64,000 nucleotides of DNA from IMG/VR virus record IMGVR_UViG_3300044972_002389, positions 62,001 to 126,000 of that record. One strand, given 5' to 3'. The notes beneath the pieces were generated by a model. The model was given only the letters and a program-made list of their open reading frames with translations. It did no database searches and had not been told where the DNA came from. This document shows positions 37,302-50,947 of the stretch, in pieces (positions within the stretch are counted from its first letter, which is position 1; every line of letters starts with the position of its first letter). A program made the translations under genes and the position numbers.

Positions 37302-37321
37302 ACTCAGCTACTAGAGTTACC

Positions 37322-37368: not shown

Positions 37369-37509
37369 AGCTACTGCGTTCCTTTCATATGCACTAGCAA
37401 GGTTGCGATCCTCAAAAGGATTTATGATACCTCAAGCCAAATCAACTTTCTACGTGTAAGGTTGTTTGTGAATCAGTCTTCCCCGCGTGCACGTCTATAG
37501 CACCATAGG

Positions 37510-37542
37510 TGAAAACGGAGGACAATATGCCCTCCGTTTTCA
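37510..37542 (-). terminator. Hairpin at the end of the minus-strand fibre/glycan operon
   Basis: TGAAAACGGAGG (37510-21) and CCTCCGTTTTCA (37531-42), 12-bp perfect stem just past the stop at 37562. Confidence 0.7.
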
Positions 37543-37561
37543 TGTTTTTGCATAACTTAAA

Positions 37562-37870
37562 TTATCCGTTCAAAATGGTCTTGATACGTGTAATGAGATC
37601 TTCGTTGCGCCAAGTGTCCCTTATAGCATCATACGCATCATTGTCCCACACTGTAATCCCTCGACGACTGCTTCCTCTTGTTTGCGTGCTGCCATCTGGT
37701 CTTGTGTCAGTAACAAATGGCCCAAGCTCAATCTCAGCCCGCACAGAACGGTTCACAATGCTTTCATAAATTTCAGCAATAACAAACTCATTTGTTACTA
37801 CTCTTTCACTTAAAACAATTTCAGTAGTTATTGTTTGTGGATCAATAATTGATCCCACTGTCTCACTCAT
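37562..37870 (-). CDS. Small late protein (possibly fibre-associated)
   Basis: aaggag SD and exact TATAAATA at 37895-37902 on the minus strand. Confidence 0.7.
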   Translation of the reverse strand: MSETVGSIIDPQTITTEIVLSERVVTNEFVIAEIYESIVNRSVRAEIELGPFVTDTRPDGSTQTRGSSRRGITVWDNDAYDAIRDTWRNEDLITRIKTILNG

Positions 37871-37894
37871 GTTTTTTTCTCCTTGGATATAACA

Positions 37895-37902
37895 TATTTA
37901 TA
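37895..37902 (-). promoter_or_regulatory. T4-type late promoter TATAAATA (minus strand)
   Basis: tatttata on the plus strand. Confidence 0.7.
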
Positions 37903-38773
37903 TAACTTTATTGAACTCTAGTGCAGTTAGCAAGGATTTTATTATGTCGTTGAAACGGCATTCGTTAAGTAACCCGTGTAATTGATATTTTTCAATAATA
38001 GATGTTGGTTGTCCTGAACTCATACACAAGTCGTGTAAATCTTCTCCCCATTTCTCAATAAAAGTTTGCATATACAACCGGTTACGCAGTTGAGTTTCAG
38101 CTAAGGTTTCCGCCCCGTTCCAACTACTGCAACCGTTGAAGTGTAGCAAATAACTGCTGCAATATTTGATTTCAAAGCCTTTTTGAAGTAGGCGCAATCT
38201 ATAGTCCACATCTTCACCTCCCATGTTGAACGCTTCATCAAAGCCTCCAACTTCTTGGTAAATTAGACGTGGAATTCTACATACATAGGTGGGCATGAGA
38301 AGGCGCTCAAAAGGTGCTGGTGACCGTGCAGCATGTGTGTGAGCAGCTACATTCAAATGTAGAAATCTACCACCAAATTGCTGTAGATTTAAGGTAGGGT
38401 CAAAGCCATAAAAATGAGTTTGATTACAACTGGGAATGCTCACTGTCCTGTCATTTATCACTAGACGGGTAGCCCACTTGGGGGTAAAAACAACATCATT
38501 GCTGAGGAAAACTAAATCTGCATATTGTTCATCAGCCCATCTCAGCAATTGATTGATATTTGTGCTAAAATTCTGAGGGTTTGAATTCACATATACTAGG
38601 TTGGGATCAAAACAGTCCAAATGCCAGTTTTTAGTCCATTCTCCGTCGTTGTCAATCAACACAAACCTATCTTCTGCAGATAATTTTGTGTGTTTGAAAA
38701 AACTTGTAAGGGCTACATGTGTATATTGGTTGCTGCTTGCAACAGTTATCATCCCATATAAGGTGCCTGCCAT
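37898..38773 (-). CDS. GT2-family glycosyltransferase
   Basis: VLIDND, NFSTNINQ, VFLSNDVVF, VGGFDEAF..GGEDVDY.LR, LHF. Confidence 0.85.
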   Translation of the reverse strand: MAGTLYGMITVASSNQYTHVALTSFFKHTKLSAEDRFVLIDNDGEWTKNWHLDCFDPNLVYVNSNPQNFSTNINQLLRWADEQYADLVFLSNDVVFTPKWATRLVINDRTVSIPSCNQTHFYGFDPTLNLQQFGGRFLHLNVAAHTHAARSPAPFERLLMPTYVCRIPRLIYQEVGGFDEAFNMGGEDVDYRLRLLQKGFEIKYCSSYLLHFNGCSSWNGAETLAETQLRNRLYMQTFIEKWGEDLHDLCMSSGQPTSIIEKYQLHGLLNECRFNDIIKSLLTALEFNKVI

Positions 38774-38779
38774 TTATAA

Positions 38780-39216
38780 TTGCTTTCTTGTAGGTGTATG
38801 AAACTTCCAGTGTTGCATACTTTTGTTAAAAGATCTGCTATATGCGTGAATCTAGAGGATATTTTGTAATTCTAAGCTGTTTCATTACCAAAAAATCATA
38901 AGGTAATTACAGATCCTACAACACAGTCGTCAAGTCTCTTGGAGAATTGGTAGTAGCGACCACTTTTTTTGGACTGTATGCTATCCAATATCAAACTCAT
39001 TGTGAGTATTTGCCGGCGTCGATCTCAAGTTATTTGTGCAACCACACCAACAGGGCTGTTGATGTCTCTTATAAGGATGTGCACAAAACTATGCAAAGGA
39101 TCACTTATAGTGGCAGAGAACTTTGGATTTTGTTTAATTATGCTGTTGAGCAGTGGGCTACCTGCTCCAGGTAACGCACTGCTCAAGTGAAACTCTTTTA
39201 AATTTACTGTTTGCAT
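38780..39216 (-). pseudogene. Decayed sulfotransferase gene
   Basis: FHLSSALPGAGSPLLNSIIKQNP resembles the sulfotransferase 5'-PSB loop (LPRSGSTLL...QNP); in-frame TGA at 39027-25, then DRRRQIL..ILDS remnants and further stops/frameshifts. Confidence 0.7.
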
Positions 39217-40901
39217 ACTAACATTCCCAGATCGGGAAGATACAGGTAGTGGATATCACAGTTGAAGATTGTTATCAAGGCGTCTACCAGTGTTTCCACC
39301 AATGGCTGCCCAGCTAGATTGAAACTAGTGTTAAACAGCAACGGTGTTTCGGTTTGTTGCCGAAAAGCATCTAGCAGCTGATACAAATGCAAGTTTTGCT
39401 CGCTGGTGACAGTTTGTACTCTGCAGGTGCCATCCACATGTGTAACTGCAGGAATCAACTCTCTTTGGCTTTCCTTCACATTTACAGCATACATCATGTA
39501 AGGGCTTTCATTGAGATTGCGCATGTCAAACCAGTCATTTGCATGTTCTGCCATCACACTCGCAGCAAAAGGGCGGAACCATTCACGATTTTTAACTTGG
39601 TTAACAATATCCTTGCCGTTGGTTACTCGAGGATCAAAAAGAATGCTTCTGTTGCCTAGTGCACGAGGCCCACCTTCACTAGCGCCTTGAAACAAAGCCA
39701 CAATATTGCCTTCTGCCAGCAGTAGTGCCACTTCAGCAGGTGATGTGTCTCTCATGCTGATACCTTCAACAGAAGCAATAGTGGTTTCAATCTGATTATA
39801 GTCTGGCAACACACTCAAGTAGAGATGAGAGAGTGGTTGAGGTGTAGTATCTTGGCTCAGAACATAATAAGCATGCCGAGCTAAACCAATGGCTGTTCCA
39901 CCATCATGTGCAATGGGATCAATGTAAAACTCAATATTAGGGAAACGTTCTAGATATTTGTAGTTGGCAACACAGTTGAGTGCATAACCACCACTGATTA
40001 CAATGCGATTTTCTCCAGTAATGTCAATAGCACGCTCAATCAACTTCACCATCTGCTCTTCAGTTTCTTTCTGCACATGGTAGGCTAGATTCTTGTCTTG
40101 ATCTCGCACTAATTCAAAGTTATTATGCCAGTCACTTGGTTGTGTGTATCTACGCAAGTAAGGAAATCTATTCTCGTCAATGTGTGCGCCGGTGGGATAT
40201 CGAGGAATCAACAAGTTCTTGTTGCCTTTATTGTTGATGAAAAAGGCAGGAATGTTGCTGTCTTCTTGGCCATAAGGAGCTAGTCCCATGGTCTTCCCAG
40301 CTTCAATAGCCCCAAATCCTAAATAATCACTTACACTCTCGTATGCCTTAACAATAGTAACATTATTATCAAATTCTTGGATACCGTTGTCGTAGTAGAG
40401 GCTGGTTTCCGCACCGTCACTGTATCTTTTGTAAACTGCGTTGAACTCATGTGGATAGCTGCAATGATAGATGCTTTCAGTTTCAAAACCCCCAGTAAGT
40501 GGTAGTCCTTCTCCCATGCTTTCTTGCACATAGCTTCCGGCCCCATCTACGACCAAGGCGCATGCTGTTTCAAAACCACTGCCATAGAAGGCATTAGCTG
40601 CATGACCCAAGTGATGTAGATGGCCCATTAGGGTAACTTGCACATTAGGACTGAATTTGCGAGCTAATGCAGCATAGGCATTCTCGTTAGTCCAAGGAAG
40701 AGTAACCCAATTAGTGGTGGTCCCACCAATGATCAAGTGGTCTACCAAATGATTAGTTAGTACCCATAGCATGGCTCTAAATGGATTACCGTCATACTTT
40801 AGGCGACTCCATCGTTCTTCCTCGCTATAAAACAGCAACTTACCGTCTTCAACAAGCGCCACACTGCTGTTGTGACCGGGATTGATGGCCATTATTTTCA
40901 T
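39204..40901 (-). CDS. O-carbamoyltransferase (NodU/CmcH/TobZ family)
   Basis: GHNSS, HHLGHA..AF, VVDGAG, AGKTMGLAPYG, SGGYALNC, HDGGTAIG, E.GPRALGNRSIL, KNREWFRPFA, HVDGTCR.QTV, NTSFNLAG.PL. Confidence 0.95.
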   Translation of the reverse strand: MKIMAINPGHNSSVALVEDGKLLFYSEEERWSRLKYDGNPFRAMLWVLTNHLVDHLIIGGTTTNWVTLPWTNENAYAALARKFSPNVQVTLMGHLHHLGHAANAFYGSGFETACALVVDGAGSYVQESMGEGLPLTGGFETESIYHCSYPHEFNAVYKRYSDGAETSLYYDNGIQEFDNNVTIVKAYESVSDYLGFGAIEAGKTMGLAPYGQEDSNIPAFFINNKGNKNLLIPRYPTGAHIDENRFPYLRRYTQPSDWHNNFELVRDQDKNLAYHVQKETEEQMVKLIERAIDITGENRIVISGGYALNCVANYKYLERFPNIEFYIDPIAHDGGTAIGLARHAYYVLSQDTTPQPLSHLYLSVLPDYNQIETTIASVEGISMRDTSPAEVALLLAEGNIVALFQGASEGGPRALGNRSILFDPRVTNGKDIVNQVKNREWFRPFAASVMAEHANDWFDMRNLNESPYMMYAVNVKESQRELIPAVTHVDGTCRVQTVTSEQNLHLYQLLDAFRQQTETPLLFNTSFNLAGQPLVETLVDALITIFNCDIHYLYLPDLGMLVCKQ

Positions 40902-41833
40902 CAGCGTGTTTTCCTTTCAATATCTGCAACAATCTTTTGATAGATGTCGTCTAGTTCTTTGGTTGAGAATTTCATTGTGCCTTCATTCAGCCTATTGCTG
41001 AGATTTACGTCCAGACCAGCAATACGAATAGGACTATATTTCCTAGCAGCAGGCTTTTCAATTATTTGAAAGTAATCTGGATAGCTGGTGTTCTTGGGAA
41101 ACGTACTCCCAATAATTACTGTGCCTGGTACTCCAGAGGCTCTAGCAATATGCTGGCCTACACTGTCACATCCTACAAAATAGTCAGAGTTGGCAACTAG
41201 AGCTGACCAAACTCTTAAATCAGCAGTGTATTTGGCACTCCAGTTGTCGTCTTTCAATTGAAAGTCAGGCTCGCCAAAAAAGATCATGTTGTATTTTTGA
41301 TTAAGACGCCGGCTCAGGCTCAAATAGTCGTTTGAGCTTAAGCTTCTGCTTTCTTCGTCAATCACTGTGGCACGATCCAGTTTGGCACCACGGCCAAAGG
41401 GTTGAAATACAATAGTTTTGTTCTTTTTGCTCACACTTTTGAGATCAGCTATGGTATTCTTGGCTACTAGAGTTTCTTGTTGATTGAATGCCAAGCGTGG
41501 TGGCAATAAATCACTGTGATCTGTAGTTTGGTTGATTTCCCTGTCAAAAGCTTCAGCCAAACTTATCTCTTGCCTAAAATATGCTGGGATACGATAAGGC
41601 TCCGGGGTTACTATTTGATCAGCATTCTTGACTACGTTGTCAAAAACACCTTTTGTATCAAGATTGTAGGTGCGATCTTGCAGCTCGGGAATACCCCAGT
41701 ATAAGAAATCCCATGCCCCAACCAACACAGCCCATTCGCTGTTGGGATGCAATCGACCGTATTTGATTAATGCAGGAATAGCGGTGATTACTCTACCAGC
41801 ACCACCGTCTATCCAAAATATCTTTTTTGTCAT
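40901..41833 (-). CDS. GT9-like glycosyltransferase
   Basis: IDGGAGRVI.AIPA at the N-terminus and LRVWSALV...DYFVGCDSVGQH.A; start MTKKIF after gagg SD. Confidence 0.7.
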   Translation of the reverse strand: MTKKIFWIDGGAGRVITAIPALIKYGRLHPNSEWAVLVGAWDFLYWGIPELQDRTYNLDTKGVFDNVVKNADQIVTPEPYRIPAYFRQEISLAEAFDREINQTTDHSDLLPPRLAFNQQETLVAKNTIADLKSVSKKNKTIVFQPFGRGAKLDRATVIDEESRSLSSNDYLSLSRRLNQKYNMIFFGEPDFQLKDDNWSAKYTADLRVWSALVANSDYFVGCDSVGQHIARASGVPGTVIIGSTFPKNTSYPDYFQIIEKPAARKYSPIRIAGLDVNLSNRLNEGTMKFSTKELDDIYQKIVADIERKTR

Positions 41834-41955
41834 TCTAGTTCCTCGAAGCTTCAAGATATTATAAGGCAAATTGACTATTTTTGCCAAAATTTAAGATTCA
41901 TCTGCCTATAATAGACTAAAAAGCTGTTGAGAACTTGACCAACACTTGTAGGTAG

Positions 41956-42654
41956 TCACAATTGCCGGCCTTTTGTCTGTCCCAGCCCTGTGTACCATTG
42001 TAGGAAGTCACCCTGATATTGCTTATAGCCGCCGTGCTTGCAAGTGATTGTGGTGTCAAGATATATGGGAAATCCGCCTTCCTGAAGTTTTTCAAACATA
42101 CGTATGTCCTCACTCATAAGACCGGTGTTGGTAACTATCACATCACAGATCATTCGGCGTTGCTTCATGTCTTTGGGATCAATATAGGCTTGACTGGTGT
42201 TCCACAAATGGTTTATAGCTTGTCGACTCATGCGTGCAAATCCTGTGCCCAAGCCATCAACTTCCATCAAACCAGTTTGCGGGTCAATAGGGCGTTTAGT
42301 CATTTGTCTTACAACATATTCTGGACGATCCCCTTTTTTGGGATATGTGCCACCCACAACATCTACAGGATGATCCAGTAGTTTAAAAAACTGTTGCGGG
42401 GTCCATTCAATATCTTGATCAATCCATACGAGATCATCAACACCGATCTCATATGCTAATTGCAAGGTGTCATTTCTAGCTCTTTGAATCAATGCATCGA
42501 AGCTGACCCATAAGGGTAAAAGTTCAATGTTTCTTTTTTCAGCAGCTTTAGTAGTATAAAATAAACTGCTAGTGTAGCTGACCTCTACCTTGCCATCATA
42601 GCTAGGGGTGCCTATCATTACTCTGCGACGAGTTGATTGATTAAAATTTGCCAT
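41956..42654 (-). CDS. GT-A fold glycosyltransferase-like protein
   Basis: IGTPSY, LIQRARN, VWIDQDI (DxD), VVGGTYP, LGTGF, SEDI, CKH.G. Confidence 0.78.
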   Translation of the reverse strand: MANFNQSTRRRVMIGTPSYDGKVEVSYTSSLFYTTKAAEKRNIELLPLWVSFDALIQRARNDTLQLAYEIGVDDLVWIDQDIEWTPQQFFKLLDHPVDVVGGTYPKKGDRPEYVVRQMTKRPIDPQTGLMEVDGLGTGFARMSRQAINHLWNTSQAYIDPKDMKQRRMICDVIVTNTGLMSEDIRMFEKLQEGGFPIYLDTTITCKHGGYKQYQGDFLQWYTGLGQTKGRQL

Positions 42655-43526
42655 TCGTGTATTCTAGTGTTCCAACTGTAGAGTTTGTCAAATAATAATG
42701 CTTGATTTTGCCATTGAGGGTTATTTGAATCATATTTGCTCAATTGGTTATCAAGAGATTTAGCAAAGGCTGCTGACAATACCCGTTTGTTGGTAGTATA
42801 GTCTACAAAACAAGCACTTTCGCCAAGGGTTTCTTCAAGAGCACCAAGTCGAGTGGTGACCACCTGGCACCCAGCACTAGCAGCCTCTATTGCTGAGATG
42901 CAGCTGGTTTCTGGGAAAGTGCTGGGATATACCCATAAGTGACTGCCTTGCAATCTCTTTCTCACAGCTTGATTGAGCCCGTAACCAACATACTGGATTT
43001 GAGTGTGCTGGCGACAGCGATCAAACAAAGACTGATAGCCTCTCATGGTGCTGTCACTGAAACCTTTGCCATAGATAATGGTGCTGCTGTAAACTGTGAG
43101 ACGCCAGTTTTGATATTGCAGTTGGTCTACAGCATCCAGCAACACATCAAGTCCTCTCCAAGGAGTGCTGGTGTAGATCATTTCAATTTGCTGAGAGGCG
43201 GGTTTGAGTTGCCAATTGAAAGAGTGTATGGCATTGCGGATCACAACTGTTTTGTTTGGATCTATGCCAAAATAGTTTATCCATTTTATACGTTGCCATT
43301 CACTTACAAATATCCAGCAAGCAACAGCCTGTTGAAACTGTGGATTAGCCGCACCTTGACTGGCCTCTTGGTCGGTGTCGAGATGCTGCCAAACAACGTT
43401 CTTTTTGTTGGGATCTATTTGATGTAAGCTGCAATTGCTTACTATGAGATTCAACGATGTTGGCCAACCTCCCAGTTGTTGAGAGAGATTGGCCATCATG
43501 AGTTCAGTGCCACCGCGTGGGATCAT
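42618..43526 (-). CDS. GT-B (GT4-like) glycosyltransferase
   Basis: PRGGTE, IFVSEWQ, IRNAI, IYTSTPWRGL, YPSTFPETSCISAIEA..AG. Confidence 0.85.
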   Translation of the reverse strand: MIPRGGTELMMANLSQQLGGWPTSLNLIVSNCSLHQIDPNKKNVVWQHLDTDQEASQGAANPQFQQAVACWIFVSEWQRIKWINYFGIDPNKTVVIRNAIHSFNWQLKPASQQIEMIYTSTPWRGLDVLLDAVDQLQYQNWRLTVYSSTIIYGKGFSDSTMRGYQSLFDRCRQHTQIQYVGYGLNQAVRKRLQGSHLWVYPSTFPETSCISAIEAASAGCQVVTTRLGALEETLGESACFVDYTTNKRVLSAAFAKSLDNQLSKYDSNNPQWQNQALLFDKLYSWNTRIHEWQILINQLVAE

Positions 43527-43537
43527 AAGCCTAAAGT

Positions 43538-46500
43538 CTACACACCTTTGGCAGTGAGTGCAAGTTCAAGAGCTGTCACACGCTGATTGAGCTGATCGTT
43601 GCTTTCAGCCAACTCTTGCACAGCTCGAATCAACACAGGGAACACGTTAGCTACTGTGGCTTCAAGCTTCTCTGGGTTGTCCTCAAGCACCAAATGCAGC
43701 CAGTCTTGTAGATTATATCGATTGCTGACTTCCAGTACTTCTTGAGCAATAAATCCAGCGCTCTTGACCCCTACTCGGCTGCCATCTCTAGTATTCCATG
43801 TGAATTTTACTGGACGTAGATCACGTATCAGCTGCAATCCCAAAGGAATATCTTCGATGTCAGTTTTGTCTCTAGCATCAGACAAAGCAGTAATAGTAGT
43901 TACCTGAGCTCGCAGTGTAGTAATGCTGGAATCACCAAAAGTTATTGTGTTGTTGCTGGTTGCTGTTGCTCCACTTGCACCGCATCCCAAAAACACGTTG
44001 TTACTGCCATTTGTGTTGCTCGTACCTGCTGATCGTCCTATTGCAGTGTTGTTTGTGCCATTGGTATTCTGCTGTAGGGCAGCGCCGCCAATTGCTATGT
44101 TTGAATTGGTGGTATTGTTCCTTAGAGCACATGCCCCCAATGCAATGTTGTCACTGCCACAAAAGTTAGTGCCAAGGGCATCAAAGCCCAGGCCTATATT
44201 ATTGATACCACTTGTATTAAATTGGAGTGCCCAACAACCAACTGCAATGTTATTGCTACCAGTTGTATTGCATCGTAGAGCACAAGCACCGATAGCTGTA
44301 TTATTACTACCATTTTGGTTGCAACAAAGCGCAGCTAGGCCAAATGCCATGTTAAATAGCCCAGTGCTGCTGGTATTGGATGTGCCTATTTTATAACTGC
44401 TAGTGCAGTCCAAACACGCATATCCACAACAGCCCACAGGGTTGCCGTTTATAGCAAATCCATTCCCATCTATAGCCAGTCGCAGACAACTGCCAGCAGC
44501 AATCAGCACACAAGATACACTGCCTGCTGCTGGTGTTACATTGCCAATTACCGTGTTGTTGAACCCAGTTGTGATCAGACTTCCAGCGTTTTGGCCAATT
44601 GCTATGTTACATGTTCCAGTGGTGTTGGCAGTCAGCGCACCAATACCCAGTGCTATGTTACCAGTCCCAGTAGTATTCTGCTGTAGGGCAGCGCCGCCAA
44701 TTGCTATGTTTGAATTGGTGGTATTGTTCCTTAGAGCACATGCCCCCAATGCAATGTTGTCACAGCCACCAGGGTTAATTCCAAGGGCATCAAAGCCCAT
44801 GCCTATGTTATTGTTACCACTTGTATTAAATTGGAGTGCTAAACAACCAACTGCAATGTTGTGACACCCGCTAGTATTGCATCGTAGAGCAGACGCACCG
44901 ATAGCTGTATTGCTACAACCATTACGGTTGCAACAAAGCGCAGCTAGGCCAAATGCCATGTTAAATAGCCCAGTGCTGCTGGTATTGGATGTGCCTATTT
45001 TATAACTGCTAGTGCAGTCCAAACACGCATATCCACAACAGCCCACAGGGTTGCCGTTTATAGCAAATCCATTCCCATCTATAGCCAGTCGCAGACAACT
45101 GCCAGCAGCAATCAGCACACAAGATACACTGCCTGCTGCTGGTGTTACATTGCCAATTACCGTGTTGTTGAACCCAGTTGTGATCAGACTTCCAGCGTTT
45201 TGGCCAATTGCTATGTTACATGTTCCAGTGGTGTTGGCAGTCAGCGCACCAATACCCAGTGCTATGTTACCAGTCCCAGTAGTATTCTGCGATAGGGCAA
45301 AGTAACCAATTGCTATGTTGCAACCGGTGGTGTTTGAGCAAAGGGCCAATGCCCCCAATGCTATGTTGTCACTTCCATTCAAGTTAGTGCCTAGGGCATT
45401 AACTCCCATGCCTATGTTATTGCAACCTAGTGTGTTGAATTGAAGTGCCAAACAACCAATTGCAATATTATGAGACCCGTTCTGGTTGCATCGTAGAGCA
45501 GACGCACCGATAGCTGTATTGCTACAACCAGTTAAATTACAACAAAGCGCCCCTTGGCCAAATGCCATGTTAAATGTCCCAGCACTGCTGGACATAAATG
45601 TGCCTATTTTATAACTGGAAGTGCAGTCCAAACATGCATATCCACAGCTACCAATAGATGCTCCATTAACATAAAGCCCAGTTCCGTCTACTCGCAGTCG
45701 TTCACATGCGCCAGCACCAATCAATACAGTGCAAACCAAACCCCCGGTGCCAGACAAATTGCCAATTACCGTGTTGTTGAACCCAGTGGTTATTAGGGAG
45801 CCAGCGTTTTGGCCAATTGCTATGTTACATGTTCCAGTGGTGTTGGCAGTCAGCGCACCAATACCCAGTGCTATGTTAAATGTGCCATTGGTATTCTGCT
45901 GTAGGGCAGCGCCGCCAATTGCTATGTTTGAATTGGTAAGATTGTTCCTTAGAGCACATGCCCCCAATGCAATGTTGTCACAGCCACCAGGGTTAATGCC
46001 AAGGGCATCAAAGCCCATGCCTATGTTATTGTTACCAGTTAGGTTTAATTGGAGTGCCAAACAACCAACTGCAATGTTATTGCTACCAGCAGTATTGCAT
46101 CGTAGAGCAGACGCACCGATAGCTGTATTGCTACTACCATTACGGTTGCAACAAAGCGCACCTAGGCCAAATGCCATGTTATATAACCCAGTGCTGCTGG
46201 ACATAAATGTGCCTATTTTATAACTGCTAGTGCAGTCCAAAGACGCATATCCACAGCTACCAATAGATGCCCCATTAACATAAAGCCCACTTGAGTCTAC
46301 TTTCAGTCGTTCACAACTGCCAGCACCAATCAATACAGTGTTATTCAAACCCGTAGTGCCAGACAAATTGCCAATTATTGTGTTGTTGCACCCAGTTGTG
46401 ATCAGACTTCCAGCGAGTTGGCCAATTGCTATGTTACATGTTCCAACGGTGTTTGCACCTAGCGCACCAATACCCAGTGCTATGTTAAATGTGCCACTGC

Positions 46501-49500
46501 AATTCTGCTGTAGGGCAGCGCCGCCAATTGCTATGTTTGAATTGGTCTGATTGTTCCTTAGAGCACATGCCCCCAATGCAATGTTGTCACTGCCACCAGA
46601 GGTAGTGCCAAGGGTGCCAAGGGCATCAAAGCCCATGCCTATGTTATTGTTACCACTTGTATTAAATTGGAGTGCCAGACAACCAACTGCAATGTTATTG
46701 CTACCAGTTGTATTGCATCGTAGAGCAGACGCACCGATAGCTGTATTATTACTACCATTTAGATTAAGACAAAGCGCAGCTAGGCCAAATGCCATGTTAT
46801 ATAACCCAGTGCTGCTGGACATAAATGTGCCTATTTTATAACTGCTATAGACGTCCAAACACGCATATCCACAGCTACCAATAGATGCCCCATTAACATA
46901 AAGCCCACTTGAGTCTACTTTCAGTCGTTCACAACTGCCAGCACCAATCAATACAGTGTTATTCAAACCCGTAGTGCCAGACAAATTGCCAATTATTGTG
47001 TTGTTGCACCCAGTTGTGATCAGACTTCCAGCGAGTTGGCCAATTGCTATGTTACATGTTCCAACGGTGTTTGCACCTAGCGCACCAATACCCAGTGCTA
47101 TGTTAAATGTGCCACTGCAATTCTGCTGTAGGGCAGCGCCGCCAATTGCTATGTTTGAATTGGTCTGATTGTTCCTTAGAGCACATGCCCCCAATGCAAT
47201 GTTGTCACTGCCACCAGAGGTAGTGCCAAGGGTGCCAAGGGCATCAAAGCCCATGCCTATGTTATTGTTACCAGTTAGGTTAAGTTGGAGTGCTAAACAA
47301 CCAACTGCAATATTGTGACACCCGCTAGTATTGCATCGTAGAGCAGACGCACCGATAGCTGTATTGCTACAACCATTTCGGTTACAACAAAGCGCACCTT
47401 GGCCAAATGCCATGTTAAATGTCCCAGTGCTGCTGGTATTGAATGTGCCTATTTTATAACTGCTAGTGCAGTCCAAACACGCATATCCGCAACAGCCCAC
47501 ACCGCTGCCGTTTATAGCAAATCCATTCACATCTATAGCCAGTCGCTGACAACTGCCAGCAGCAATCAGCACACAACATACACTGCCGGCTGCTGGTGAC
47601 AAATTGCCAATTATTGTGTTGTTGAACCCAGTTGTGATCAGACTTCCAGCGAGTTGGCCAATTGCTATGTTACATATTCCAGCGGTGTTTGCAGTCAGCG
47701 CACCAATACCCAGTGCTATGTTAAATGTGCCACTGGTATTCTGCTGTAGGGCAGCGCCGCCAATTGCTATGTTTGAATTGGTAATATTGTTCCTTAGAGC
47801 ACATGCCCCCAATGCAATGTTGTCACTGCCATTAAAATTAGTGCCAAGGGCATCAAAGCCCATGCCTATGTTATTGTTACCACTTGTATTAAATTGGAGT
47901 GCCAAACAACCAACTGCAATGTTATTGCTACCAGTTGTATTGCATCGTAGAGCACTCGCACCGATAGCTGTATTGCTACAACCATTTCGGTTACAACAAA
48001 GCGCACCTTGGCCAAAAGCAAAGTTGTTTGTTCCTGTACTGACTGTAAGGCCGTTACCAACCTTATAGCTGGCATAGATGTCCAAATTGGCAGTAGTAGC
48101 CGCAACACCTGTTAAAGCAGCGCCGCAACCAAAATAACATCTTGCACACACGTCCCCTGTGCCGTTGTTGACAACCAAACAGTTTGCGTCAACTCTTAGT
48201 CTTTCGTTTGTTCCAGCGCCTATCAACACTGTGTTCACACAATCAGCTGTGCCAGCCAAGTTACCAATTACTGTATTACTGCACCCAGTTGTTATTGAAA
48301 AACCTGCACAAACGCCTATACCAATGTTGCTGTTACCAGTTGTGTTGCAGTTCAGGGCCATGAATCCAAGTGCTGTATTGAAACAGCCTATAGTATTTGA
48401 CTTAAGACTATTCCCGCCAACCGCAGTATTGCACAAACCTATTGTGTTAGCTGTAAGGCTGCAAGTGCCTATACCAACATTTTCCACTCCTGTGGTATTG
48501 GCGTCTACAGCATAAGCCCCAATTCCAATGTTGTTAAAGCCTGAGGTATTAGCCCCCAATGCAAAGGCACCAAAACCTATGTTTTGGCATCCTATTGTAT
48601 TGTTTTGAAGTACTTGCTCACCAACCGCAGTGTTGTAGCCACCAGTTGTAGTCCTTCTCAAGGCAAAATGTCCCAGAGCCACATTGGCTGTTCCCTGTGT
48701 GCCACTTACGCAACAAAGAGCCCCGTTACCAACACCAATGTTACCACACGGCCCGCCTCCTAACATCATGGTGTCAATGCCTATTGCGATATTACTGCGC
48801 CCAGTTGTGCTTGCACACATGCTGCTGCTGCCAAATGCCAAGTTTTGACATCCAAAACCGTTGTTGACCAAAGCTAGACAACCAACTGCAATGTTATCTG
48901 CTCCAGTAGCAGTAGTATTGCCAGCATTATATCCCAACTGCACATTCGACCCAACAGGAGTGTTGGCATAAACTGTCCCCAAACTTGTGGGAGTAGCAGC
49001 AGACACACTTCCGCCGCTAATGCCAGTTAAACCAGCACCACAGCCAAAGAAGCAGCGAGCACACACATCACCAGTGCCATTGTTTACAACTAGACAATTG
49101 GCGTCAACACGGATACGTTCAGTAGCCCCTGCGCCAATCAATACAGTGGCGGTGAGGCCAGCACAACCTGATAAATTACCTATAATAGTATTGCTGGTTC
49201 CGGTTGTGATATTACCCCCACTGCTGTTGCCAATTGCTATATTACATGCACCAGTAGTTGTGTTGAGTAGCGAAAGAACACCAATGCCAATGTTGCAGTT
49301 GCCAGTATTAGCGGCCAAAGCACATCTGCCCATTGCAATGTTACGAACTCCTACTGTATTGCTGGCCAAAGCAAATGGCCCAACAGCAACGTTGCTACCA
49401 CCCGATGTGTTTGCAGCTAGTGAGCATGCGCCAAGAGCAATATTGCATGCTCCAATGGTGTTGGCACATGATGCGTAGTGGCCGATAGCTGTATTCAAGG

Positions 49501-50674
49501 TTCCTGTTGTGTTGGCAGAGAGGGCAAACGATCCAAATGCAGCATTGTCTGAACCAACTGAGCTGCTGCACATGCTGGAGAATCCCAAAGCAATATTGTT
49601 GCAGCCTGTGGTGTTGCAGCGCAAAGCATTTGAGCCCACAGCGATGTTCCATAAGCCGTTAGTGAGTCCTCCCAGGGCACTGCTGCCAACAGCTACGTTG
49701 TCTGATCCACTCACACTATTGAACAGGGCACAGTCACCAACAGCAATGTTCCGACTGCCACTGGTGTTGTTAAACAAACTGTTGTTGCCAACAGCAATGT
49801 TCAAGTTGCCTTGGGTATTGCAACGCAAGGCGCTTGTGCCCAGTGCAGTATTGTAGCTGCCTGTTGTGTTGCACAACAGGGTGGCTTCACCAAATGCGGC
49901 ATTGAAGCTGCCAGTGGTATTAGTGCACAGACTGTTCCGCCCAACAGCCACATTCATTTGGCCCACAGTGTTGGCATATAGTGCACACCGCCCTACAGCC
50001 ACGTTCCAATTGCCAGTTGTGTTTGAGAACAACGCGTCGCTGCCAAGGGCAGTATTTTCTTGCCCAATCGTATTGGATTTGAGCGCGTCTACCCCCACGG
50101 CAGTGTTTTGAACGCCAGTTGTGTTATTGCTGAGCGCCAAACAACCAATAGCAATATTTTCTGTGCCTGTGCTGGTTGTGCTGCCTGCACAGTATCCTAT
50201 TGCAGTGTTGGAGTTGTTGCTTGTGAGGCCATACACAGTTCCCAATTGAATTGGAGTTGCTGCTGAAACTGCCCCGCCAGAAATGCCAGTTAAACCAGCA
50301 CCACAACCAAAGAAGCAGCGGGCACACACATCACCAGTGCCATTGTTGACAACTAGACAATTGGCGTCAACACGCAATCTCTCAGTTGTGCCAGCACCAA
50401 TCAGCACAGTGTCAACGAGGCCTGGGGTACCAGCCAACTGCCCAATCACTGTGTTGGCACAGCCTGTTGTGATGCTACCACCAGCATAGACACCTAGACC
50501 CATGTTCAGAGAGCCGGTTGAGACAGCCAGAAGAGCCCCACCACCAAAAGCTGTATTGCTAACACCTGTGTTGAGATTACAAAGTGCATTGATACCCACG
50601 GCTGTGTTAAGTGCAGTCGTATTGCATCCTGTACTATTGGGAATCACTATATTCCCACAAATTTTTATCGCCAT
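43538..50674 (-). CDS. 2378-aa Cys-rich repeat fibre/adhesin with C-terminal intramolecular chaperone (peptidase S74)
   Basis: Many ~14-aa N-x-A-(I/V)-G-x-x-A-L-x-x-N-x-x-G repeats (YadA/Hep_Hag-like) separated by neck motifs; C-terminal SDARDK..I..I..GL..I..LRPV.F.W and GFIAQEV (Ser codon at 43882-80). Confidence 0.88.
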   Translation of the reverse strand: MAIKICGNIVIPNSTGCNTTALNTAVGINALCNLNTGVSNTAFGGGALLAVSTGSLNMGLGVYAGGSITTGCANTVIGQLAGTPGLVDTVLIGAGTTERLRVDANCLVVNNGTGDVCARCFFGCGAGLTGISGGAVSAATPIQLGTVYGLTSNNSNTAIGYCAGSTTSTGTENIAIGCLALSNNTTGVQNTAVGVDALKSNTIGQENTALGSDALFSNTTGNWNVAVGRCALYANTVGQMNVAVGRNSLCTNTTGSFNAAFGEATLLCNTTGSYNTALGTSALRCNTQGNLNIAVGNNSLFNNTSGSRNIAVGDCALFNSVSGSDNVAVGSSALGGLTNGLWNIAVGSNALRCNTTGCNNIALGFSSMCSSSVGSDNAAFGSFALSANTTGTLNTAIGHYASCANTIGACNIALGACSLAANTSGGSNVAVGPFALASNTVGVRNIAMGRCALAANTGNCNIGIGVLSLLNTTTGACNIAIGNSSGGNITTGTSNTIIGNLSGCAGLTATVLIGAGATERIRVDANCLVVNNGTGDVCARCFFGCGAGLTGISGGSVSAATPTSLGTVYANTPVGSNVQLGYNAGNTTATGADNIAVGCLALVNNGFGCQNLAFGSSSMCASTTGRSNIAIGIDTMMLGGGPCGNIGVGNGALCCVSGTQGTANVALGHFALRRTTTGGYNTAVGEQVLQNNTIGCQNIGFGAFALGANTSGFNNIGIGAYAVDANTTGVENVGIGTCSLTANTIGLCNTAVGGNSLKSNTIGCFNTALGFMALNCNTTGNSNIGIGVCAGFSITTGCSNTVIGNLAGTADCVNTVLIGAGTNERLRVDANCLVVNNGTGDVCARCYFGCGAALTGVAATTANLDIYASYKVGNGLTVSTGTNNFAFGQGALCCNRNGCSNTAIGASALRCNTTGSNNIAVGCLALQFNTSGNNNIGMGFDALGTNFNGSDNIALGACALRNNITNSNIAIGGAALQQNTSGTFNIALGIGALTANTAGICNIAIGQLAGSLITTGFNNTIIGNLSPAAGSVCCVLIAAGSCQRLAIDVNGFAINGSGVGCCGYACLDCTSSYKIGTFNTSSTGTFNMAFGQGALCCNRNGCSNTAIGASALRCNTSGCHNIAVGCLALQLNLTGNNNIGMGFDALGTLGTTSGGSDNIALGACALRNNQTNSNIAIGGAALQQNCSGTFNIALGIGALGANTVGTCNIAIGQLAGSLITTGCNNTIIGNLSGTTGLNNTVLIGAGSCERLKVDSSGLYVNGASIGSCGYACLDVYSSYKIGTFMSSSTGLYNMAFGLAALCLNLNGSNNTAIGASALRCNTTGSNNIAVGCLALQFNTSGNNNIGMGFDALGTLGTTSGGSDNIALGACALRNNQTNSNIAIGGAALQQNCSGTFNIALGIGALGANTVGTCNIAIGQLAGSLITTGCNNTIIGNLSGTTGLNNTVLIGAGSCERLKVDSSGLYVNGASIGSCGYASLDCTSSYKIGTFMSSSTGLYNMAFGLGALCCNRNGSSNTAIGASALRCNTAGSNNIAVGCLALQLNLTGNNNIGMGFDALGINPGGCDNIALGACALRNNLTNSNIAIGGAALQQNTNGTFNIALGIGALTANTTGTCNIAIGQNAGSLITTGFNNTVIGNLSGTGGLVCTVLIGAGACERLRVDGTGLYVNGASIGSCGYACLDCTSSYKIGTFMSSSAGTFNMAFGQGALCCNLTGCSNTAIGASALRCNQNGSHNIAIGCLALQFNTLGCNNIGMGVNALGTNLNGSDNIALGALALCSNTTGCNIAIGYFALSQNTTGTGNIALGIGALTANTTGTCNIAIGQNAGSLITTGFNNTVIGNVTPAAGSVSCVLIAAGSCLRLAIDGNGFAINGNPVGCCGYACLDCTSSYKIGTSNTSSTGLFNMAFGLAALCCNRNGCSNTAIGASALRCNTSGCHNIAVGCLALQFNTSGNNNIGMGFDALGINPGGCDNIALGACALRNNTTNSNIAIGGAALQQNTTGTGNIALGIGALTANTTGTCNIAIGQNAGSLITTGFNNTVIGNVTPAAGSVSCVLIAAGSCLRLAIDGNGFAINGNPVGCCGYACLDCTSSYKIGTSNTSSTGLFNMAFGLAALCCNQNGSNNTAIGACALRCNTTGSNNIAVGCWALQFNTSGINNIGLGFDALGTNFCGSDNIALGACALRNNTTNSNIAIGGAALQQNTNGTNNTAIGRSAGTSNTNGSNNVFLGCGASGATATSNNTITFGDSSITTLRAQVTTITALSDARDKTDIEDIPLGLQLIRDLRPVKFTWNTRDGSRVGVKSAGFIAQEVLEVSNRYNLQDWLHLVLEDNPEKLEATVANVFPVLIRAVQELAESNDQLNQRVTALELALTAKGV
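44317..45290. repeat. Direct repeat in the fibre gene, ~365 bp at offset 609
   Basis: 44317-44681 matches 44926-45290 as far as I could read; the antisense ORFs at 44403 and 45012 translate identically over that span. Confidence 0.85.
46244..47273. repeat. Direct repeat in the fibre gene, ~410 bp at offset 618
   Basis: 46244-46655 matches 46862-47273; the antisense ORFs 46338-46550 and 46956-47168 are identical. Confidence 0.85.
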
Positions 50675-50778
50675 AGTGGATTACACCTTGTTTTCGTTTT
50701 CAGAGTTCTTTCCTGCACTACAACAAAAATGGCTGAACCATCTTCGCTCTCCCCTGCTGGATCAAACTCGGCTACCCC

Positions 50779-50784
50779 TATTTA
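50779..50784 (-). promoter_or_regulatory. Late promoter core TAAATA for the fibre operon
   Basis: tattta on the plus strand, about 105 nt upstream of the fibre ATG. Confidence 0.55.
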
Positions 50785-50882
50785 CGGAATGGTCTTGGAG
50801 CTAGGTAGTTGATTACCGTTTTGCCTCTACCTTTTTAAGGTGTCCTGACACCGTCGGGAAAAATTTTTTCCCAAATTTCCAC

Positions 50883-50910
50883 GTGACTTAAGAGTTTTTG
50901 GTTGTATATT
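50883..50910 (+). promoter_or_regulatory. Sigma70-like promoter GTGACT-N16-TATATT
   Basis: Upstream of aaggagg SD and the VWA ATG; palindrome GGGAAAAA-T-TTTTTCCC at 50856-72 nearby. Confidence 0.6.
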
Positions 50911-50947
50911 ATGCTGAATATGCCACTACGCAAGGAGGCCACTTATT

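What the first reader, a model, noticed from the sequence alone, without database searches (positions are those of the whole stretch)
37562..50784. Fibre gene co-transcribed with a glycan-building and decorating operon
Seen: one minus-strand unit: late promoter, 2378-aa fibre, GT4-like, GT-A, GT9-like, carbamoyltransferase, sulfotransferase remnant, GT2, small protein, hairpin. The fibre has very many N-x-S/T sequons (NTT, NTS, NNT, NGS) and 15 Cys in one 203-aa unit. Known: some bacterial adhesins are glycosylated at N-x-S/T by cytoplasmic GTs, giant-virus fibrils are glycosylated, and carbamoyl plus sulfate groups decorate Nod factors. Inference: the phage builds a carbamoylated (formerly also sulfated) glycan on its fibres or virion for host-glycan mimicry, adhesion or shielding. 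Host surface modification is the alternative.
Basis: partly seen in the sequence, partly recalled or inferred. Interest (0 to 1): 0.76.

Follow-up and report, generated by a model that had tools for sequence, protein, structure and literature searches.

The report
Phage fibre gene with glycan-decorating enzyme cassette
A freshwater jumbo phage carries a giant tail-fibre gene followed by sugar-transferring and sugar-decorating enzymes; the linkage is conserved in many related phages and probably serves to put a modified sugar coat on the fibre or virion, though no experiment shows this.

Summary
On the minus strand, 37510-50786 holds a late-promoter-like motif, a 2378-aa fibre with a C-terminal Peptidase_S74 chaperone, a GT4-like GT-B, a GT-A, a GT9-like GT-B, a NodU/TobZ-type O-carbamoyltransferase, the first 72 codons of a sulfotransferase, a GT2-like GT-A, a small late protein and a strong hairpin.

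The window comes from a roughly 400-kb T4-superfamily jumbo phage found in many lake metagenomes. In 22 of 24 dereplicated related loci a fibre-like gene lies just upstream of the cassette. The GT9-like plus carbamoyltransferase pair also sits among tail-fibre genes in cyanomyoviruses (P-SSM2, S-SSM7, S-CAM1) and in a marine virus, and a GT9-like gene alone does so in an N4-like Vibrio phage.

Relatives carry two intact sulfotransferases, methyltransferases and a kinase. This lineage has lost them from the cassette, so "formerly sulfated" is supported.

All enzymes are predicted soluble, are under purifying selection and lie behind late-type promoters. This favours modification of a phage-made target, but nothing here identifies the target.

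The N-x-S/T argument fails. NTT(G) is part of the fibre's 17-residue structural repeat, and no GT41 N-glycosyltransferase was found. Modification of the host envelope remains a serious rival.

The parts
50779..50786 (-). Late-promoter-like motif CGTAAATA (TAAATA core), 105 nt upstream of the fibre start codon
   Evidence: Sequence. TAAATA is 12.7x enriched in the 80 nt upstream of genes; there are 54 sites in the 223-kb record on both strands, and only two on this strand in 37300-51000.
43538..50674 (-). Fibre gene, 2378 aa: Gly/Asn/Ala/Thr-rich, 134 Cys, built of 17-residue repeats
   Evidence: Identical ORF in another contig, L012.
44513..48184 (-). Six super-repeats of 203/206 aa (aa 831-2054). 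Each is a Cys-rich stretch of about 50 aa followed by about nine 17-residue turns with consensus ALxxNTTGxNNxAxGxx
   Evidence: Autocorrelation peaks at shifts 17, 203 and 206. Alignment A3 consensus. The AF2 model has one short strand per 17 residues, pLDDT 74.
43727..43882 (-). Peptidase_S74 intramolecular chaperone domain (aa 2265-2316), beginning with the motif SDARDK
   Evidence: Pfam 3e-11, 43.9 bits against a cut-off of 22. Motif position.
42618..43526 (-). GT4-like GT-B glycosyltransferase, 302 aa; starts 11 nt after the fibre stop codon
   Evidence: Pfam Glyco_trans_1_4 2.2e-10, Glycos_transf_1 6.4e-10, phrog_2170 1e-24. dN/dS 0.12 against L006.
41956..42654 (-). GT-A fold glycosyltransferase, 232 aa, DQD motif; overlaps the GT4 gene by 37 nt
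   Evidence: phrog_34859 7e-8. Atlas structural neighbours are GT2/Anp1-like, TM 0.87-0.92. dN/dS 0.02.
40901..41833 (-). GT9-like GT-B glycosyltransferase (310 aa from the ATG), a phage-restricted divergent clade
   Evidence: Best PDB matches: WaaF 1psw 1.5e-10, 3tov, TibC 4rap, WaaC 2h1h. dN/dS 0.04.
39204..40901 (-). NodU/CmcH/TobZ-family O-carbamoyltransferase, 565 aa; its start overlaps the GT9-like stop
   Evidence: Pfam Carbam_trans_C 6.5e-60 and Carbam_trans_N 4.7e-24. PDB carbamoyltransferases 7xb6, NovN, TobZ and GdmN at 1e-45 to 5e-52.
39004..39216 (-). Sulfotransferase remnant: only the first ~72 codons remain. The ~230 nt that follow, up to the next gene, match nothing in the relative
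   Evidence: tblastn with the L006 302-aa sulfotransferase: residues 1-72, 69% identity, E 7e-25. dN/dS 0.35, relaxed. The same truncation is present in L010-L017.
37898..38773 (-). GT2-like GT-A glycosyltransferase, 291 aa
   Evidence: Weak Pfam GT2/GT7C hits at about 1e-3. Atlas neighbours are GT2 at 0.98-0.99. Orthologues in L004 and L006.
37895..37902 (-). Perfect T4-type late promoter core TATAAATA, 32 nt upstream of the small gene; overlaps the GT2-like stop codon
   Evidence: The same arrangement occurs in relatives L004, L006, L020 and L038.
37562..37870 (-). Small acidic protein, 102 aa, unknown function; conserved at the end of the cassette
   Evidence: Orthologues at 62-89% identity in L004 and L006. 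Atlas neighbours are viral hypothetical proteins. dN/dS 0.04.
37510..37542 (-). Terminator-like hairpin, 15-bp stem
   Evidence: RNA fold -24.6 kcal/mol, z -6.1, 0 of 200 shuffles as stable.

Best explanation
This is a late-expressed fibre module of a freshwater T4-superfamily jumbo phage. A giant, probably trimeric solenoid fibre is folded with the help of a C-terminal S74 chaperone. Its gene is followed by five soluble cytoplasmic enzymes: three GT-A/GT-B transferases of GT4, GT2 and GT-A type, a divergent GT9-like transferase, and an O-carbamoyltransferase.

The most likely function (inferred, not shown) is as follows. Late in infection these enzymes build a short O-carbamoylated oligosaccharide directly on a phage-made acceptor in the cytoplasm. 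The acceptor would be the Cys-rich fibre itself or another virion surface protein. No lipid carrier or export step would be needed.

In relatives the same product is also sulfated, using two sulfotransferases and a P-loop kinase, and methylated. This lineage has deleted those decorating genes from the cassette.

The GT9-like and carbamoyltransferase pair is the conserved core. By analogy with GT9 chemistry it may add a heptose that is then carbamoylated.
For: 1. Anatomy. The genes are co-directional with gaps from -37 to +122 nt. There is one late-type motif upstream and one strong hairpin downstream.

2. Linkage. In 22 of 24 dereplicated related loci a co-oriented fibre-like ORF ends no more than 5.3 kb upstream of the GT9-like gene, and the gap is filled with other glyco-genes. 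The other two loci lack upstream sequence. Fibre sequences diverge to 35-40% identity or become unrecognisable while the linkage persists.

3. Other lineages. The GT9-like plus carbamoyltransferase pair lies among tail-fibre genes, and next to neck genes gp13/gp14, in P-SSM2, S-CAM1 and S-SSM7. It also occurs in marine virus AG-345-O18. In an N4-like Vibrio podovirus a GT9-like gene lies between tail fibre gp062 and tail protein gp067.

4. Late promoters. TAAATA lies 17-35 nt upstream of the GT9-like and GT4 starts in relatives L004, L020, L036, L038, L054 and L062.

5. Second cassette. A paralogous cassette in the same genome also lies downstream of a TATAAATA motif (at 32353) in one co-directional gene run and follows six repetitive RCC1-like proteins.

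6. No membrane steps. None of the enzymes has a hydrophobic segment (maximum 19-residue Kyte-Doolittle mean 1.38). No Wzx/Wzy/phosphoglycosyltransferase-type Pfam family was reported for any gene of the cassette in relatives.

7. Purifying selection. dN/dS is 0.02-0.12 for the genes where it could be computed (GT4-like, GT-A, GT9-like, carbamoyltransferase, small protein), against 0.35 for the remnant; dS was saturated for the GT2-like gene.

8. Phage-restricted family. The GT9-like family has 353 clusters among 1.84 billion representatives, and no close relative of the window's protein in 185,579 species genomes.

9. Precedent. Mycobacteriophage virion glycosylation by phage-encoded transferases is cited in PMC12619734.
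Against: There is no direct evidence for any acceptor.

The nearest solved structures include the LPS enzymes WaaF and WaaC as well as the protein heptosyltransferase TibC, at similar scores. The phage enzyme lacks the TibC-specific N-terminal beta-barrel and four-Cys iron finger.

The near-identical variant L015-L018 has this fibre gene collapsed to 92 codons yet keeps an intact cassette.

No heptose pathway gene (GmhA/SIS_2) was found in 223-329 kb of this phage, so the donor sugar is unknown.

Solved relatives of the carbamoyltransferase act on small molecules.

Synteny among related phages is partly inherited and is not independent evidence.
Confidence: 0.45

Rival explanations
1. Host envelope remodelling. 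The enzymes act on host LPS core or another host glycoconjugate at the inner face of the membrane, for example by adding a carbamoylated heptose. The purpose would be to mask receptors, block superinfection or stop progeny re-adsorbing to debris. The link to the fibre would then reflect co-adaptation of receptor and receptor-binding protein.
For: The best structural matches include WaaF and WaaC, which are compact two-lobe enzymes of about 310-350 aa like this one. The homologous cyanophage clusters were interpreted as LPS genes that alter the host surface (PMC1079782; PMC3037559). The GT4-like protein has weak NCBIfam similarity to an LPS GlcNAc transferase. The cassette persists where the adjacent fibre is deleted. 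From my own knowledge, 7-O-carbamoyl-heptose occurs in the Pseudomonas aeruginosa LPS core.
Against: The promoter motifs are of late type. That gives little time for newly made LPS to reach the surface of a cell about to lyse. Close relatives of the GT9-like protein are absent from cellular genomes, and it is only 9-16% identical to the GT9 enzymes it matches. The N-lobe has no net positive charge (0 here, family mean -0.6). The gene is consistently embedded among fibre and Cys-rich protein genes in distinct phage families.
Confidence: 0.25
2. The cassette makes a free or non-virion glycoconjugate. This would be a small decorated oligosaccharide or glycosylated metabolite, by analogy with Nod factors or aminoglycosides. 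The link to the fibre would be incidental, because fibre regions are hotspots for accessory genes.
For: Solved relatives of the carbamoyltransferase (TobZ, NovN, GdmN) and NodU modify small molecules. The set of decorating enzymes (carbamoyl, sulfate with a kinase, methyl) parallels Nod-factor tailoring. The content of the cassette varies between close relatives, as it does in accessory islands.
Against: No scaffold-forming synthase such as a NodC-like enzyme is present, and no exporter. The position among structural genes is conserved in several phage families. The promoter motifs are late-type. Selection is strongly purifying.
Confidence: 0.1
3. DNA hypermodification. The transferases glycosylate modified bases in phage DNA, as in T4 and other phages.
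For: In this window the unit lies among replication genes: DNA polymerase 14153-16921, an exonuclease, an ATPase and HNH endonucleases. Phage transferases that hypermodify DNA are known and are cited in PMC12619734.
Against: No thymidylate-synthase-family hydroxymethylase was found in three records of 223-329 kb. In relatives the cassette lies next to gp13, gp15 and sheath genes, not replication genes. The promoters are late-type. No carbamoylated or sulfated DNA glycan is known to me.
Confidence: 0.05
4. One reading: cytoplasmic N-glycosylation of the fibre at N-x-S/T sequons, as in HMW1/HMW1C adhesins.
For: There are 86 sequons against 54.7 expected from shuffles, z about 5.
Against: NTT(G) is a conserved position of the 17-residue structural repeat in this fibre and in its relatives. 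The dipeptide N[ST] is more enriched than the sequon. No GT41 family member was found in G000, G001 or G002. None of the five transferases belongs to a known N-glycosylating family.
Confidence: 0.05

Closest known systems
Cyanomyovirus 'LPS gene clusters' (P-SSM2 PSSM2_307/308 = T4-GC 302/303; S-SSM7_120/121; S-CAM1 SXBG_222/221)
   Same: The GT9-like plus Nol-like carbamoyltransferase pair is orthologous (36-39% and 42-47% identity) and is adjacent and co-oriented. It lies between tail-fibre genes and next to the neck genes gp13/gp14, and follows Cys-rich proteins.
   Different: The cyanophages add heptose-nucleotide pathway genes (GmhA-like, kinase, adenylyltransferase) that were not found here. 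They lack the GT4, GT-A and GT2 genes and the sulfotransferases of the jumbo-phage cassette. The literature treats them as host-LPS genes of unknown functionality.
Mycobacteriophage virion glycosylation (Freeman et al. 2023, cited in PMC12619734)
   Same: Phage-encoded cytoplasmic glycosyltransferases are proposed or shown to decorate virion proteins. No lipid carrier is involved.
   Different: There the targets are the capsid and tail-tube C-termini, and the finding is experimentally proven. Here the target is only inferred. The enzymes differ (GT9-like, carbamoyltransferase, sulfotransferases), and so does the phage type.
Bacterial autotransporter heptosyltransferases TibC/AAH acting on TibA/AIDA-I (PMC4358343)
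   Same: A GT9-related GT-B enzyme is encoded next to a long repetitive beta-solenoid adhesin that it hyperglycosylates in the cytoplasm. TibC is among the best structural matches (E about 1e-9, TM 0.55-0.62).
   Different: The phage enzyme has no N-terminal beta-barrel and no four-Cys iron finger (it has 1 Cys). It is 310 aa against about 406. It is equally close to WaaF and WaaC. It may work like a BAHT, but it is not a member of that family.
LPS inner-core heptosyltransferases WaaC/WaaF (CAZy GT9)
   Same: Two-lobe GT-B fold and similar size. The C-lobe motif DSVGQH aligns with the nucleotide-sugar-binding region of WaaF and WaaC.
   Different: Identity is only 9-16% to the GT9 enzymes matched. 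The window protein itself has no Pfam hit. The family is phage-restricted. Its neighbours are fibres, not LPS core genes.
Giant-virus glycosylation clusters (Mimivirus fibril cluster, chlorovirus capsid glycans); from my own knowledge
   Same: The virus encodes its own cytoplasmic glycan machinery, linked to genes for surface fibrils or capsid.
   Different: Those viruses infect eukaryotes and use unrelated enzymes and sugars. No homology was tested here.
Nod-factor tailoring set (NodU carbamoyl, NodH sulfate with NodPQ, NodS/NoeI methyl)
   Same: The relatives' cassettes carry the same combination of decorations.
   Different: The NodU match is far below the equivalog cut-off (137 bits against 1000). 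There is no NodC-type backbone synthase.

Membership tests
CAZy GT9 / Pfam PF01075 heptosyltransferase | GT-B fold with two Rossmann-like lobes that most resembles solved GT9 enzymes | tested here: met
   AF2 model pLDDT 97.5. The 30 best Foldseek PDB matches are all GT9: 1psw, 3tov, 4rap/4rb4, 2h1h, 2gt1, 6dfe, at E 1.5e-10 to 8e-8.
CAZy GT9 / Pfam PF01075 heptosyltransferase | Sequence match to the family model above the curated cut-off | tested here: not met
   The window protein has no Pfam hit at E<=0.01. 31 of 63 family members match PF01075 (best 2.4e-8). A family profile reaches WaaF only at E 0.0099. It is therefore a remote relative, not a regular member.
CAZy GT9 / Pfam PF01075 heptosyltransferase | Uses ADP-heptose as donor | not testable with these tools
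   The motif DSVGQH has invariant D223 and H228 and aligns with the donor-binding region. No GmhA was found in this phage. The cyanophage orthologues are linked to heptose pathway genes.
BAHT (TibC/AAH) protein heptosyltransferases | N-terminal beta-barrel domain of about 97 residues | tested here: not met
   The model starts directly with a Rossmann strand at residues 3-8 and a helix at 12-28. The feature is defined in PMC4358343.
BAHT (TibC/AAH) protein heptosyltransferases | Iron finger formed by four conserved Cys residues | tested here: not met
   The protein has only one Cys. TibC uses Cys339, 342, 358 and 370.
NodU/CmcH/TobZ O-carbamoyltransferases | Both the Kae1-like N-domain and the YrdC-like C-domain score above Pfam cut-offs | tested here: met
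   Carbam_trans_N 85.9 bits (cut-off 24) and Carbam_trans_C 202 bits (cut-off 27). PDB homologues at about 1e-50.
NodU equivalog (NCBIfam NF041651) | Score above the equivalog cut-off | tested here: not met
   137 bits against a cut-off of 1000. It is a family member, not a NodU orthologue.
Peptidase_S74 (intramolecular chaperone) tail fibres and spikes | C-terminal S74 domain above the cut-off | tested here: met
   43.9 bits against a cut-off of 22, aa 2265-2316 of 2378. The domain begins with SDARDK.
Peptidase_S74 (intramolecular chaperone) tail fibres and spikes | Trimerisation and autocleavage at the conserved Ser | not testable with these tools
   The monomer model of one repeat unit has pLDDT 74 and no significant PDB match.
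HMW1C-type cytoplasmic N-glycosylation at N-x-S/T | A GT41-family N-glycosyltransferase encoded by the system | tested here: not met
   No PF13844 match in G000, G001 or G002, with positive controls. These records are 54-77% complete.
T4-type late transcription unit | TATAAATA-like late promoter upstream | tested here: inconclusive
   CGTAAATA (6 of 8) lies 105 nt upstream of the fibre start, and a perfect TATAAATA lies 32 nt upstream of the small gene. The core hexamer is 12.7x enriched upstream of genes. No RNA run was listed.
Phage virion glycosylation systems (mycobacteriophage type) | Glycan demonstrably attached to virion proteins | not testable with these tools
   Only genomic context is available.
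Lipid-carrier (Wzx/Wzy or ABC) polysaccharide pathway | Initiating phosphoglycosyltransferase, flippase or polymerase, with membrane-spanning segments | tested here: not met
   No hydrophobic 19-residue window above 1.38 in any enzyme. No such Pfam family was reported in the cassettes of the relatives.

The most novel reading that the evidence does not exclude
The GT9-like transferase and its partner carbamoyltransferase form a dedicated phage protein-glycosylation system. Its substrates would be the Cys-rich fibre proteins that precede it in every lineage examined. It would be a viral counterpart of autotransporter heptosylation, adding a carbamoylated sugar (in relatives also sulfated and methylated) to virion fibres. 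On this reading, the cyanophage 'LPS clusters' described in 2005 are in part virion-glycosylation clusters.
Probability: 0.3. Interest if true: 0.8.

Novelty: new variant of a known kind. Interest (0 to 1): 0.6.

Why it matters
If the cassette decorates the fibre or virion, virus-encoded virion glycosylation would extend from mycobacteriophages and giant viruses to abundant aquatic myoviruses. The chemistry would also be new for a virion: a GT9-like transferase plus carbamoyl, sulfate and methyl decorations.

It would give a testable function to the cyanophage "LPS genes", whose role has been open since 2005. The core pair is present in the isolated cyanophages P-SSM2, S-SSM7 and S-CAM1, so glycoproteomics could settle the question.

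Close relatives gain and lose the decorating genes. This suggests a rapidly varying surface glycan, which would bear on host range, on adsorption and on how such phages interact with particles and grazers in water.

Tried and rejected
- Direct sequence searches of the GT9-like, GT-A and GT2-like proteins against PDB sequences gave only chance hits. Structure prediction was needed.
- Megablast of the whole region against 50,697 phage records found nothing.
- The search for related loci with the diverse alignment A2 failed because it has no conserved stretch. The closer alignment A1 worked.
- The AF2 model of one 203-aa fibre unit (pLDDT 74) had no significant PDB match; only LRR-type solenoids appeared at E>0.05. 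The fibre fold is therefore unassigned.
- No RNA run was listed for the carbamoyltransferase gene, so co-transcription rests on motifs only.
- Literature searches for this operon, or for heptosyltransferase-linked fibre glycosylation in phages, found nothing.
- A scan of 185,579 species genomes found no cellular close relative, so it gave no clue to the host. Cluster look-ups gave no taxonomy.
- I rejected sequon enrichment as evidence for N-glycosylation.
- I rejected BAHT membership.
- I rejected "stuffer DNA" (dN/dS 0.02-0.12).
- N-lobe charge was computed as a proxy for LPS binding. It is too weak to use.
- BLAST found no similarity between the Cys-rich proteins of the cyanomyoviruses and those of the other lineages or the window fibre, and PHROGs gives none of them a function.

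Full report
**Where the window comes from.**
The window is bases 61942-125941 of a 223-kb IMG/VR virus record that CheckV rates 54% complete. Near-identical contigs of 310 and 329 kb are rated 76-77% complete, so the genome is about 400 kb. Its family-B DNA polymerase (14153-16921) is 43-47% identical to those of Agrobacterium phage Atu_ph07, Sinorhizobium phage Phosso and the GAP32 group. That places it among T4-superfamily jumbo myoviruses. The region 37500-43600 is held by at least 20 lake-water metagenome runs, so the phage is a freshwater one. Its host is unknown.

**Observation check.**
- The 2378-aa ORF 43538-50674 ends in a Peptidase_S74 intramolecular chaperone domain (43.9 bits, aa 2265-2316, beginning SDARDK). 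It matches the PHROG families 'tail spike' and 'virion structural protein' many times over.
- Next come a GT4-like GT-B (Pfam 2e-10) and a 232-aa GT-A. The GT-A has no Pfam hit but a PHROG glycosyltransferase hit, GT2/Anp1-like neighbours in the ESM Atlas at TM about 0.9, and a DQD motif.
- Then a GT9-like protein and a NodU/TobZ-type O-carbamoyltransferase. The carbamoyltransferase matches Pfam at 6.5e-60 and the solved TobZ, NovN and GdmN at about 1e-50.
- Then a 430-nt gap, a GT2-like GT-A and a 102-aa acidic protein.
- A 15-bp hairpin (-24.6 kcal/mol, z -6.1) lies at 37510-37542.

The GT9 label needed the most work. The protein has no Pfam hit and no PDB sequence hit. However, 31 of 63 diverse homologues match PF01075, and a family profile reaches WaaF at E 0.0099. 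An AF2 model with pLDDT 97.5 finds only GT9 enzymes among its 30 best PDB matches: WaaF, a Veillonella GT9, TibC and WaaC.

The sulfotransferase remnant is real. Window 39004-39216 matches residues 1-72 of an intact 302-aa sulfotransferase in the closest relative at 69% identity (E 7e-25).

**The fibre.**
It is 15.5% Gly, 12.8% Asn, 12.2% Ala, 10.5% Thr and 5.6% Cys, with 134 Cys in total. Autocorrelation shows a 17-residue repeat and super-repeats of 203/206 residues, with six units over aa 831-2054.

Aligning 44 units from this fibre and its relatives gives the consensus ALxxNTTGxNNxAxGxx. The AF2 model of one unit has one short strand per 17 residues after a poorly modelled Cys-rich stretch of about 50 residues. 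It has no significant PDB match.

There are 86 N-x-S/T sequons against 54.7 +/- 6.3 in shuffles. The dipeptide N[ST] is more enriched still (100 against 55), and 42 of the 86 sequons are followed by Gly, which is the NTTG position of the repeat. The sequons are therefore a structural feature of the solenoid. They are not evidence for N-glycosylation, and no GT41/HMW1C-type enzyme was found in three records of this phage.

**Transcription signals.**
TAAATA, the core of the T4-type late promoter, is the most enriched hexamer in the 80 nt upstream of genes. It is enriched 12.7-fold, precedes 29 of 252 genes, and occurs only 54 times in the record on both strands.

On the minus strand between 37300 and 51000 there are two copies. 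One is at 50784, 105 nt upstream of the fibre ATG. The other is a perfect TATAAATA 32 nt upstream of the small gene. Gene spacing runs from -37 to +122 nt.

In relatives the motif also lies 17-35 nt upstream of the GT4 and GT9-like starts, in L004, L020, L036, L038, L054 and the marine L062. No RNA run could be listed, so late co-transcription is inferred and not shown.

**Comparative genomics.**
The GT9-like protein has 2291 homologues at E<=1e-5 in the 5.8-billion-protein set. Many lie on contigs of 100-370 kb. Among 1.84 billion 50%-identity representatives there are only 353 clusters. No close relative of the window's protein occurs in 185,579 species genomes. The family appears to be phage-restricted.

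Loci from relatives (L004-L007, L010-L056) show a common order: fibre(s) with S74 end, GT4, GT-A, sulfotransferase A, (GT2-like), GT9-like, carbamoyltransferase, sulfotransferase B, small protein, P-loop kinase. L006 and L036 also carry two methyltransferases.

In 22 of 24 dereplicated loci a co-oriented fibre-like ORF ends no more than 5.3 kb upstream of the GT9-like gene. The other two loci end inside the cassette. In L004 and L005 the cassette lies next to the T4 gp15, gp13 and sheath homologues.

The window's lineage is a reduced version.
- Sulfotransferase A is gone. A 264-nt remnant survives in the 99%-identical variant L015-L018.
- Sulfotransferase B is cut to 72 codons.
- Both methyltransferases are absent.

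The reduced form is colinear in contigs from four lake metagenomes. The only indels are 1-nt ones at the intergenic positions 37872 and 41883.

Between the window and L006, dN/dS is 0.12 for GT4, 0.02 for GT-A, 0.04 for GT9-like, 0.05 for the carbamoyltransferase and 0.04 for the small protein. It is 0.35 for the remnant. The enzymes are therefore maintained by selection.

**Other lineages.**
The GT9-like plus carbamoyltransferase pair is adjacent and co-oriented in P-SSM2 (PSSM2_307/308), S-CAM1, S-SSM7 and S-CAM3, and in marine virus AG-345-O18.

In the cyanophages it lies between annotated tail-fibre genes. In S-CAM1 and S-SSM7 it also lies next to gp13/gp14. It is joined there by heptose-nucleotide pathway genes.

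In the N4-like Vibrio phage SBP1 a GT9-like protein (PF01075, 25.4 bits) lies between tail fibre gp062 and tail protein gp067.

**An unexplained regularity.**
In several of these lineages the GT9-like gene lies next to proteins very rich in Cys, almost always just downstream of them.
- P-SSM2: two proteins at 10.1% Cys.
- S-CAM1: three at 8.4-11.6%.
- S-SSM7: three at 10.6-11.5%.
- AG-345-O18: 9.6% and 10.6%.
- Freshwater loci L047, L050, L054 and L055: 7.4-10.7%.
- SBP1: the gene after it, at 4.4%.

In the window's own genome only one of 72 long ORFs reaches 4% Cys, and it is this fibre. BLAST finds no similarity between the cyanomyovirus Cys-rich proteins and those of the other lineages or the window fibre, and PHROGs assigns them no function.

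**A second cassette.**
Outside the window (G000 32353-55785) a TATAAATA motif at 32353 heads a second co-directional run of genes. It holds six RCC1-repeat proteins of about 450 aa, a DUF5672 protein, a second carbamoyltransferase, an intact sulfotransferase, a GT2, methyltransferases and a second GT9-like gene (42% identical). It also holds an Mrp/NUBPL-type ATPase, a kinase-like protein, a nucleotide-sugar epimerase and an aminotransferase. The phage as a whole can therefore still sulfate something.

**Mechanism.**
Shown:
- The gene content, order and conservation.
- Purifying selection on the enzymes.
- Predicted soluble enzymes with no hydrophobic segment.
- No lipid-carrier pathway genes in the cassettes.
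- Late-type promoter motifs.

Inferred: the enzymes act late, in the cytoplasm, on a phage-made acceptor. They would build a short glycan that is O-carbamoylated, and in relatives also sulfated and methylated. The fibre or the Cys-rich proteins are the most economical acceptors, because they are the constant neighbours.

The TibC/AAH-AIDA-I system is a working analogy. There a GT9-related enzyme is encoded beside the repetitive solenoid adhesin that it hyperglycosylates. The phage enzyme is not a BAHT, however. It has no N-terminal barrel and only one Cys, where TibC has a four-Cys iron finger. It is structurally as close to WaaF and WaaC as to TibC.

**Rivals.**
- Host-envelope remodelling stays credible. 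It is supported by the similarity to WaaF/WaaC, by the literature view, and by the fact that the cassette persists where this fibre gene has collapsed to 92 codons in L015-L018. In that variant, though, another fibre lies upstream.
- A free glycoconjugate is possible, because the carbamoyltransferase's solved relatives act on small molecules.
- DNA glycosylation is unlikely. No thymidylate-synthase-family hydroxymethylase was found, and the promoters are late-type.

**Verdict.**
The conserved link, the late unit and the lost sulfation hold up. The sequon argument does not, and the acceptor remains unknown. I rate virion or fibre glycosylation at about 0.45 and host-envelope modification at about 0.25. 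If true, it would be a new variant of a known kind, namely virus-encoded virion glycosylation. It can be tested in the isolated cyanophages that share the core pair.

Noticed in passing
G000:C1:32353-55785 (outside the window; L008 = G000:C1:36000-55999): A second, paralogous glycan cassette lies downstream of a TATAAATA motif at 32353 in one co-directional run of genes. It holds six tandem RCC1-repeat proteins of about 450 aa, DUF5672, carbamoyltransferase no. 2, an intact sulfotransferase, GT2, methyltransferases, GT9-like no. 2 (42% identical), an Mrp/NUBPL-type P-loop ATPase, a kinase-like protein, a nucleotide-sugar epimerase and an aminotransferase.
   Followed up: partly
L003 7852-10718; L002 7178-9978; L063 7926-10319; L062 8015-11160; L054 3741-5882; L055 382-3159; L050 3-3305; L047 7454-9067: Proteins with 7-12% Cys lie just upstream of the GT9-like gene (with carbamoyltransferase in most loci) in cyanomyoviruses, a marine virus and freshwater phages. 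BLAST finds no similarity between the cyanomyovirus ones and those of the other lineages, and PHROGs gives them no function.
   Followed up: partly
L016 1-2862 (also L015, L017, L018): In a variant 99% identical in the enzymes, the window-type fibre gene is collapsed to a 92-codon ORF that joins its first ~12 and last ~21 codons. Upstream lies a different fibre end without S74, a 342-aa repeat protein (YPWSxSGFGTKY repeats) and two small genes. This indicates swapping of the fibre module next to a constant cassette.
   Followed up: partly
window 50948-52210 (+) and 52234-53265 (-): An HNH endonuclease (phrog_1314, 3e-103) and a homing endonuclease (phrog_655, 9e-39) lie immediately upstream of the fibre unit. 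They may explain why the module sits among replication genes here but next to gp13/gp15 in relatives.
   Followed up: no
window 20341-21333 (+): Another glycosyltransferase-like ORF of 330 aa (phrog_2170 3.6e-9, phrog_4356) lies inside the replication-gene region, away from both cassettes.
   Followed up: no
L004 13844-14695 (also L005 and other relatives): The 283-aa protein at the end of the relatives' cassettes joins an APS-kinase-like P-loop N-terminus to an NMNAT/cytidylyltransferase-like C-terminus. It could be a small nucleotide-activating enzyme for sulfate or for a sugar phosphate. It is absent from the window's cassette.
   Followed up: no
whole record G000: GGTTGACA / TTGACA motifs are enriched upstream of genes (9.4x for the octamer). 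They probably mark an early, host-sigma-70-type promoter class distinct from the TAAATA class.
   Followed up: no
window 41834-41955: The GT-A to GT9-like spacer is the site where relatives carry sulfotransferase A. It holds a near-consensus sigma-70-like site (TTGGCA, 18 nt, TATAAT; 11 of 12), and a natural 1-nt indel occurs at 41883 in one lake population.
   Followed up: partly
G000:C1:1586-9079 (-), outside the window: A second giant ORF (2497 aa) has ATAAATA 35 nt upstream of its start. Parts of it resemble the P-SSM2 tail fibre PSSM2_301.
   Followed up: no
window 4833-8561 (+): A 1242-aa ORF has weak acetyltransferase-like PHROG hits and otherwise matches unknown families. It is followed by three large ORFs with no PHROG match.
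   Followed up: no
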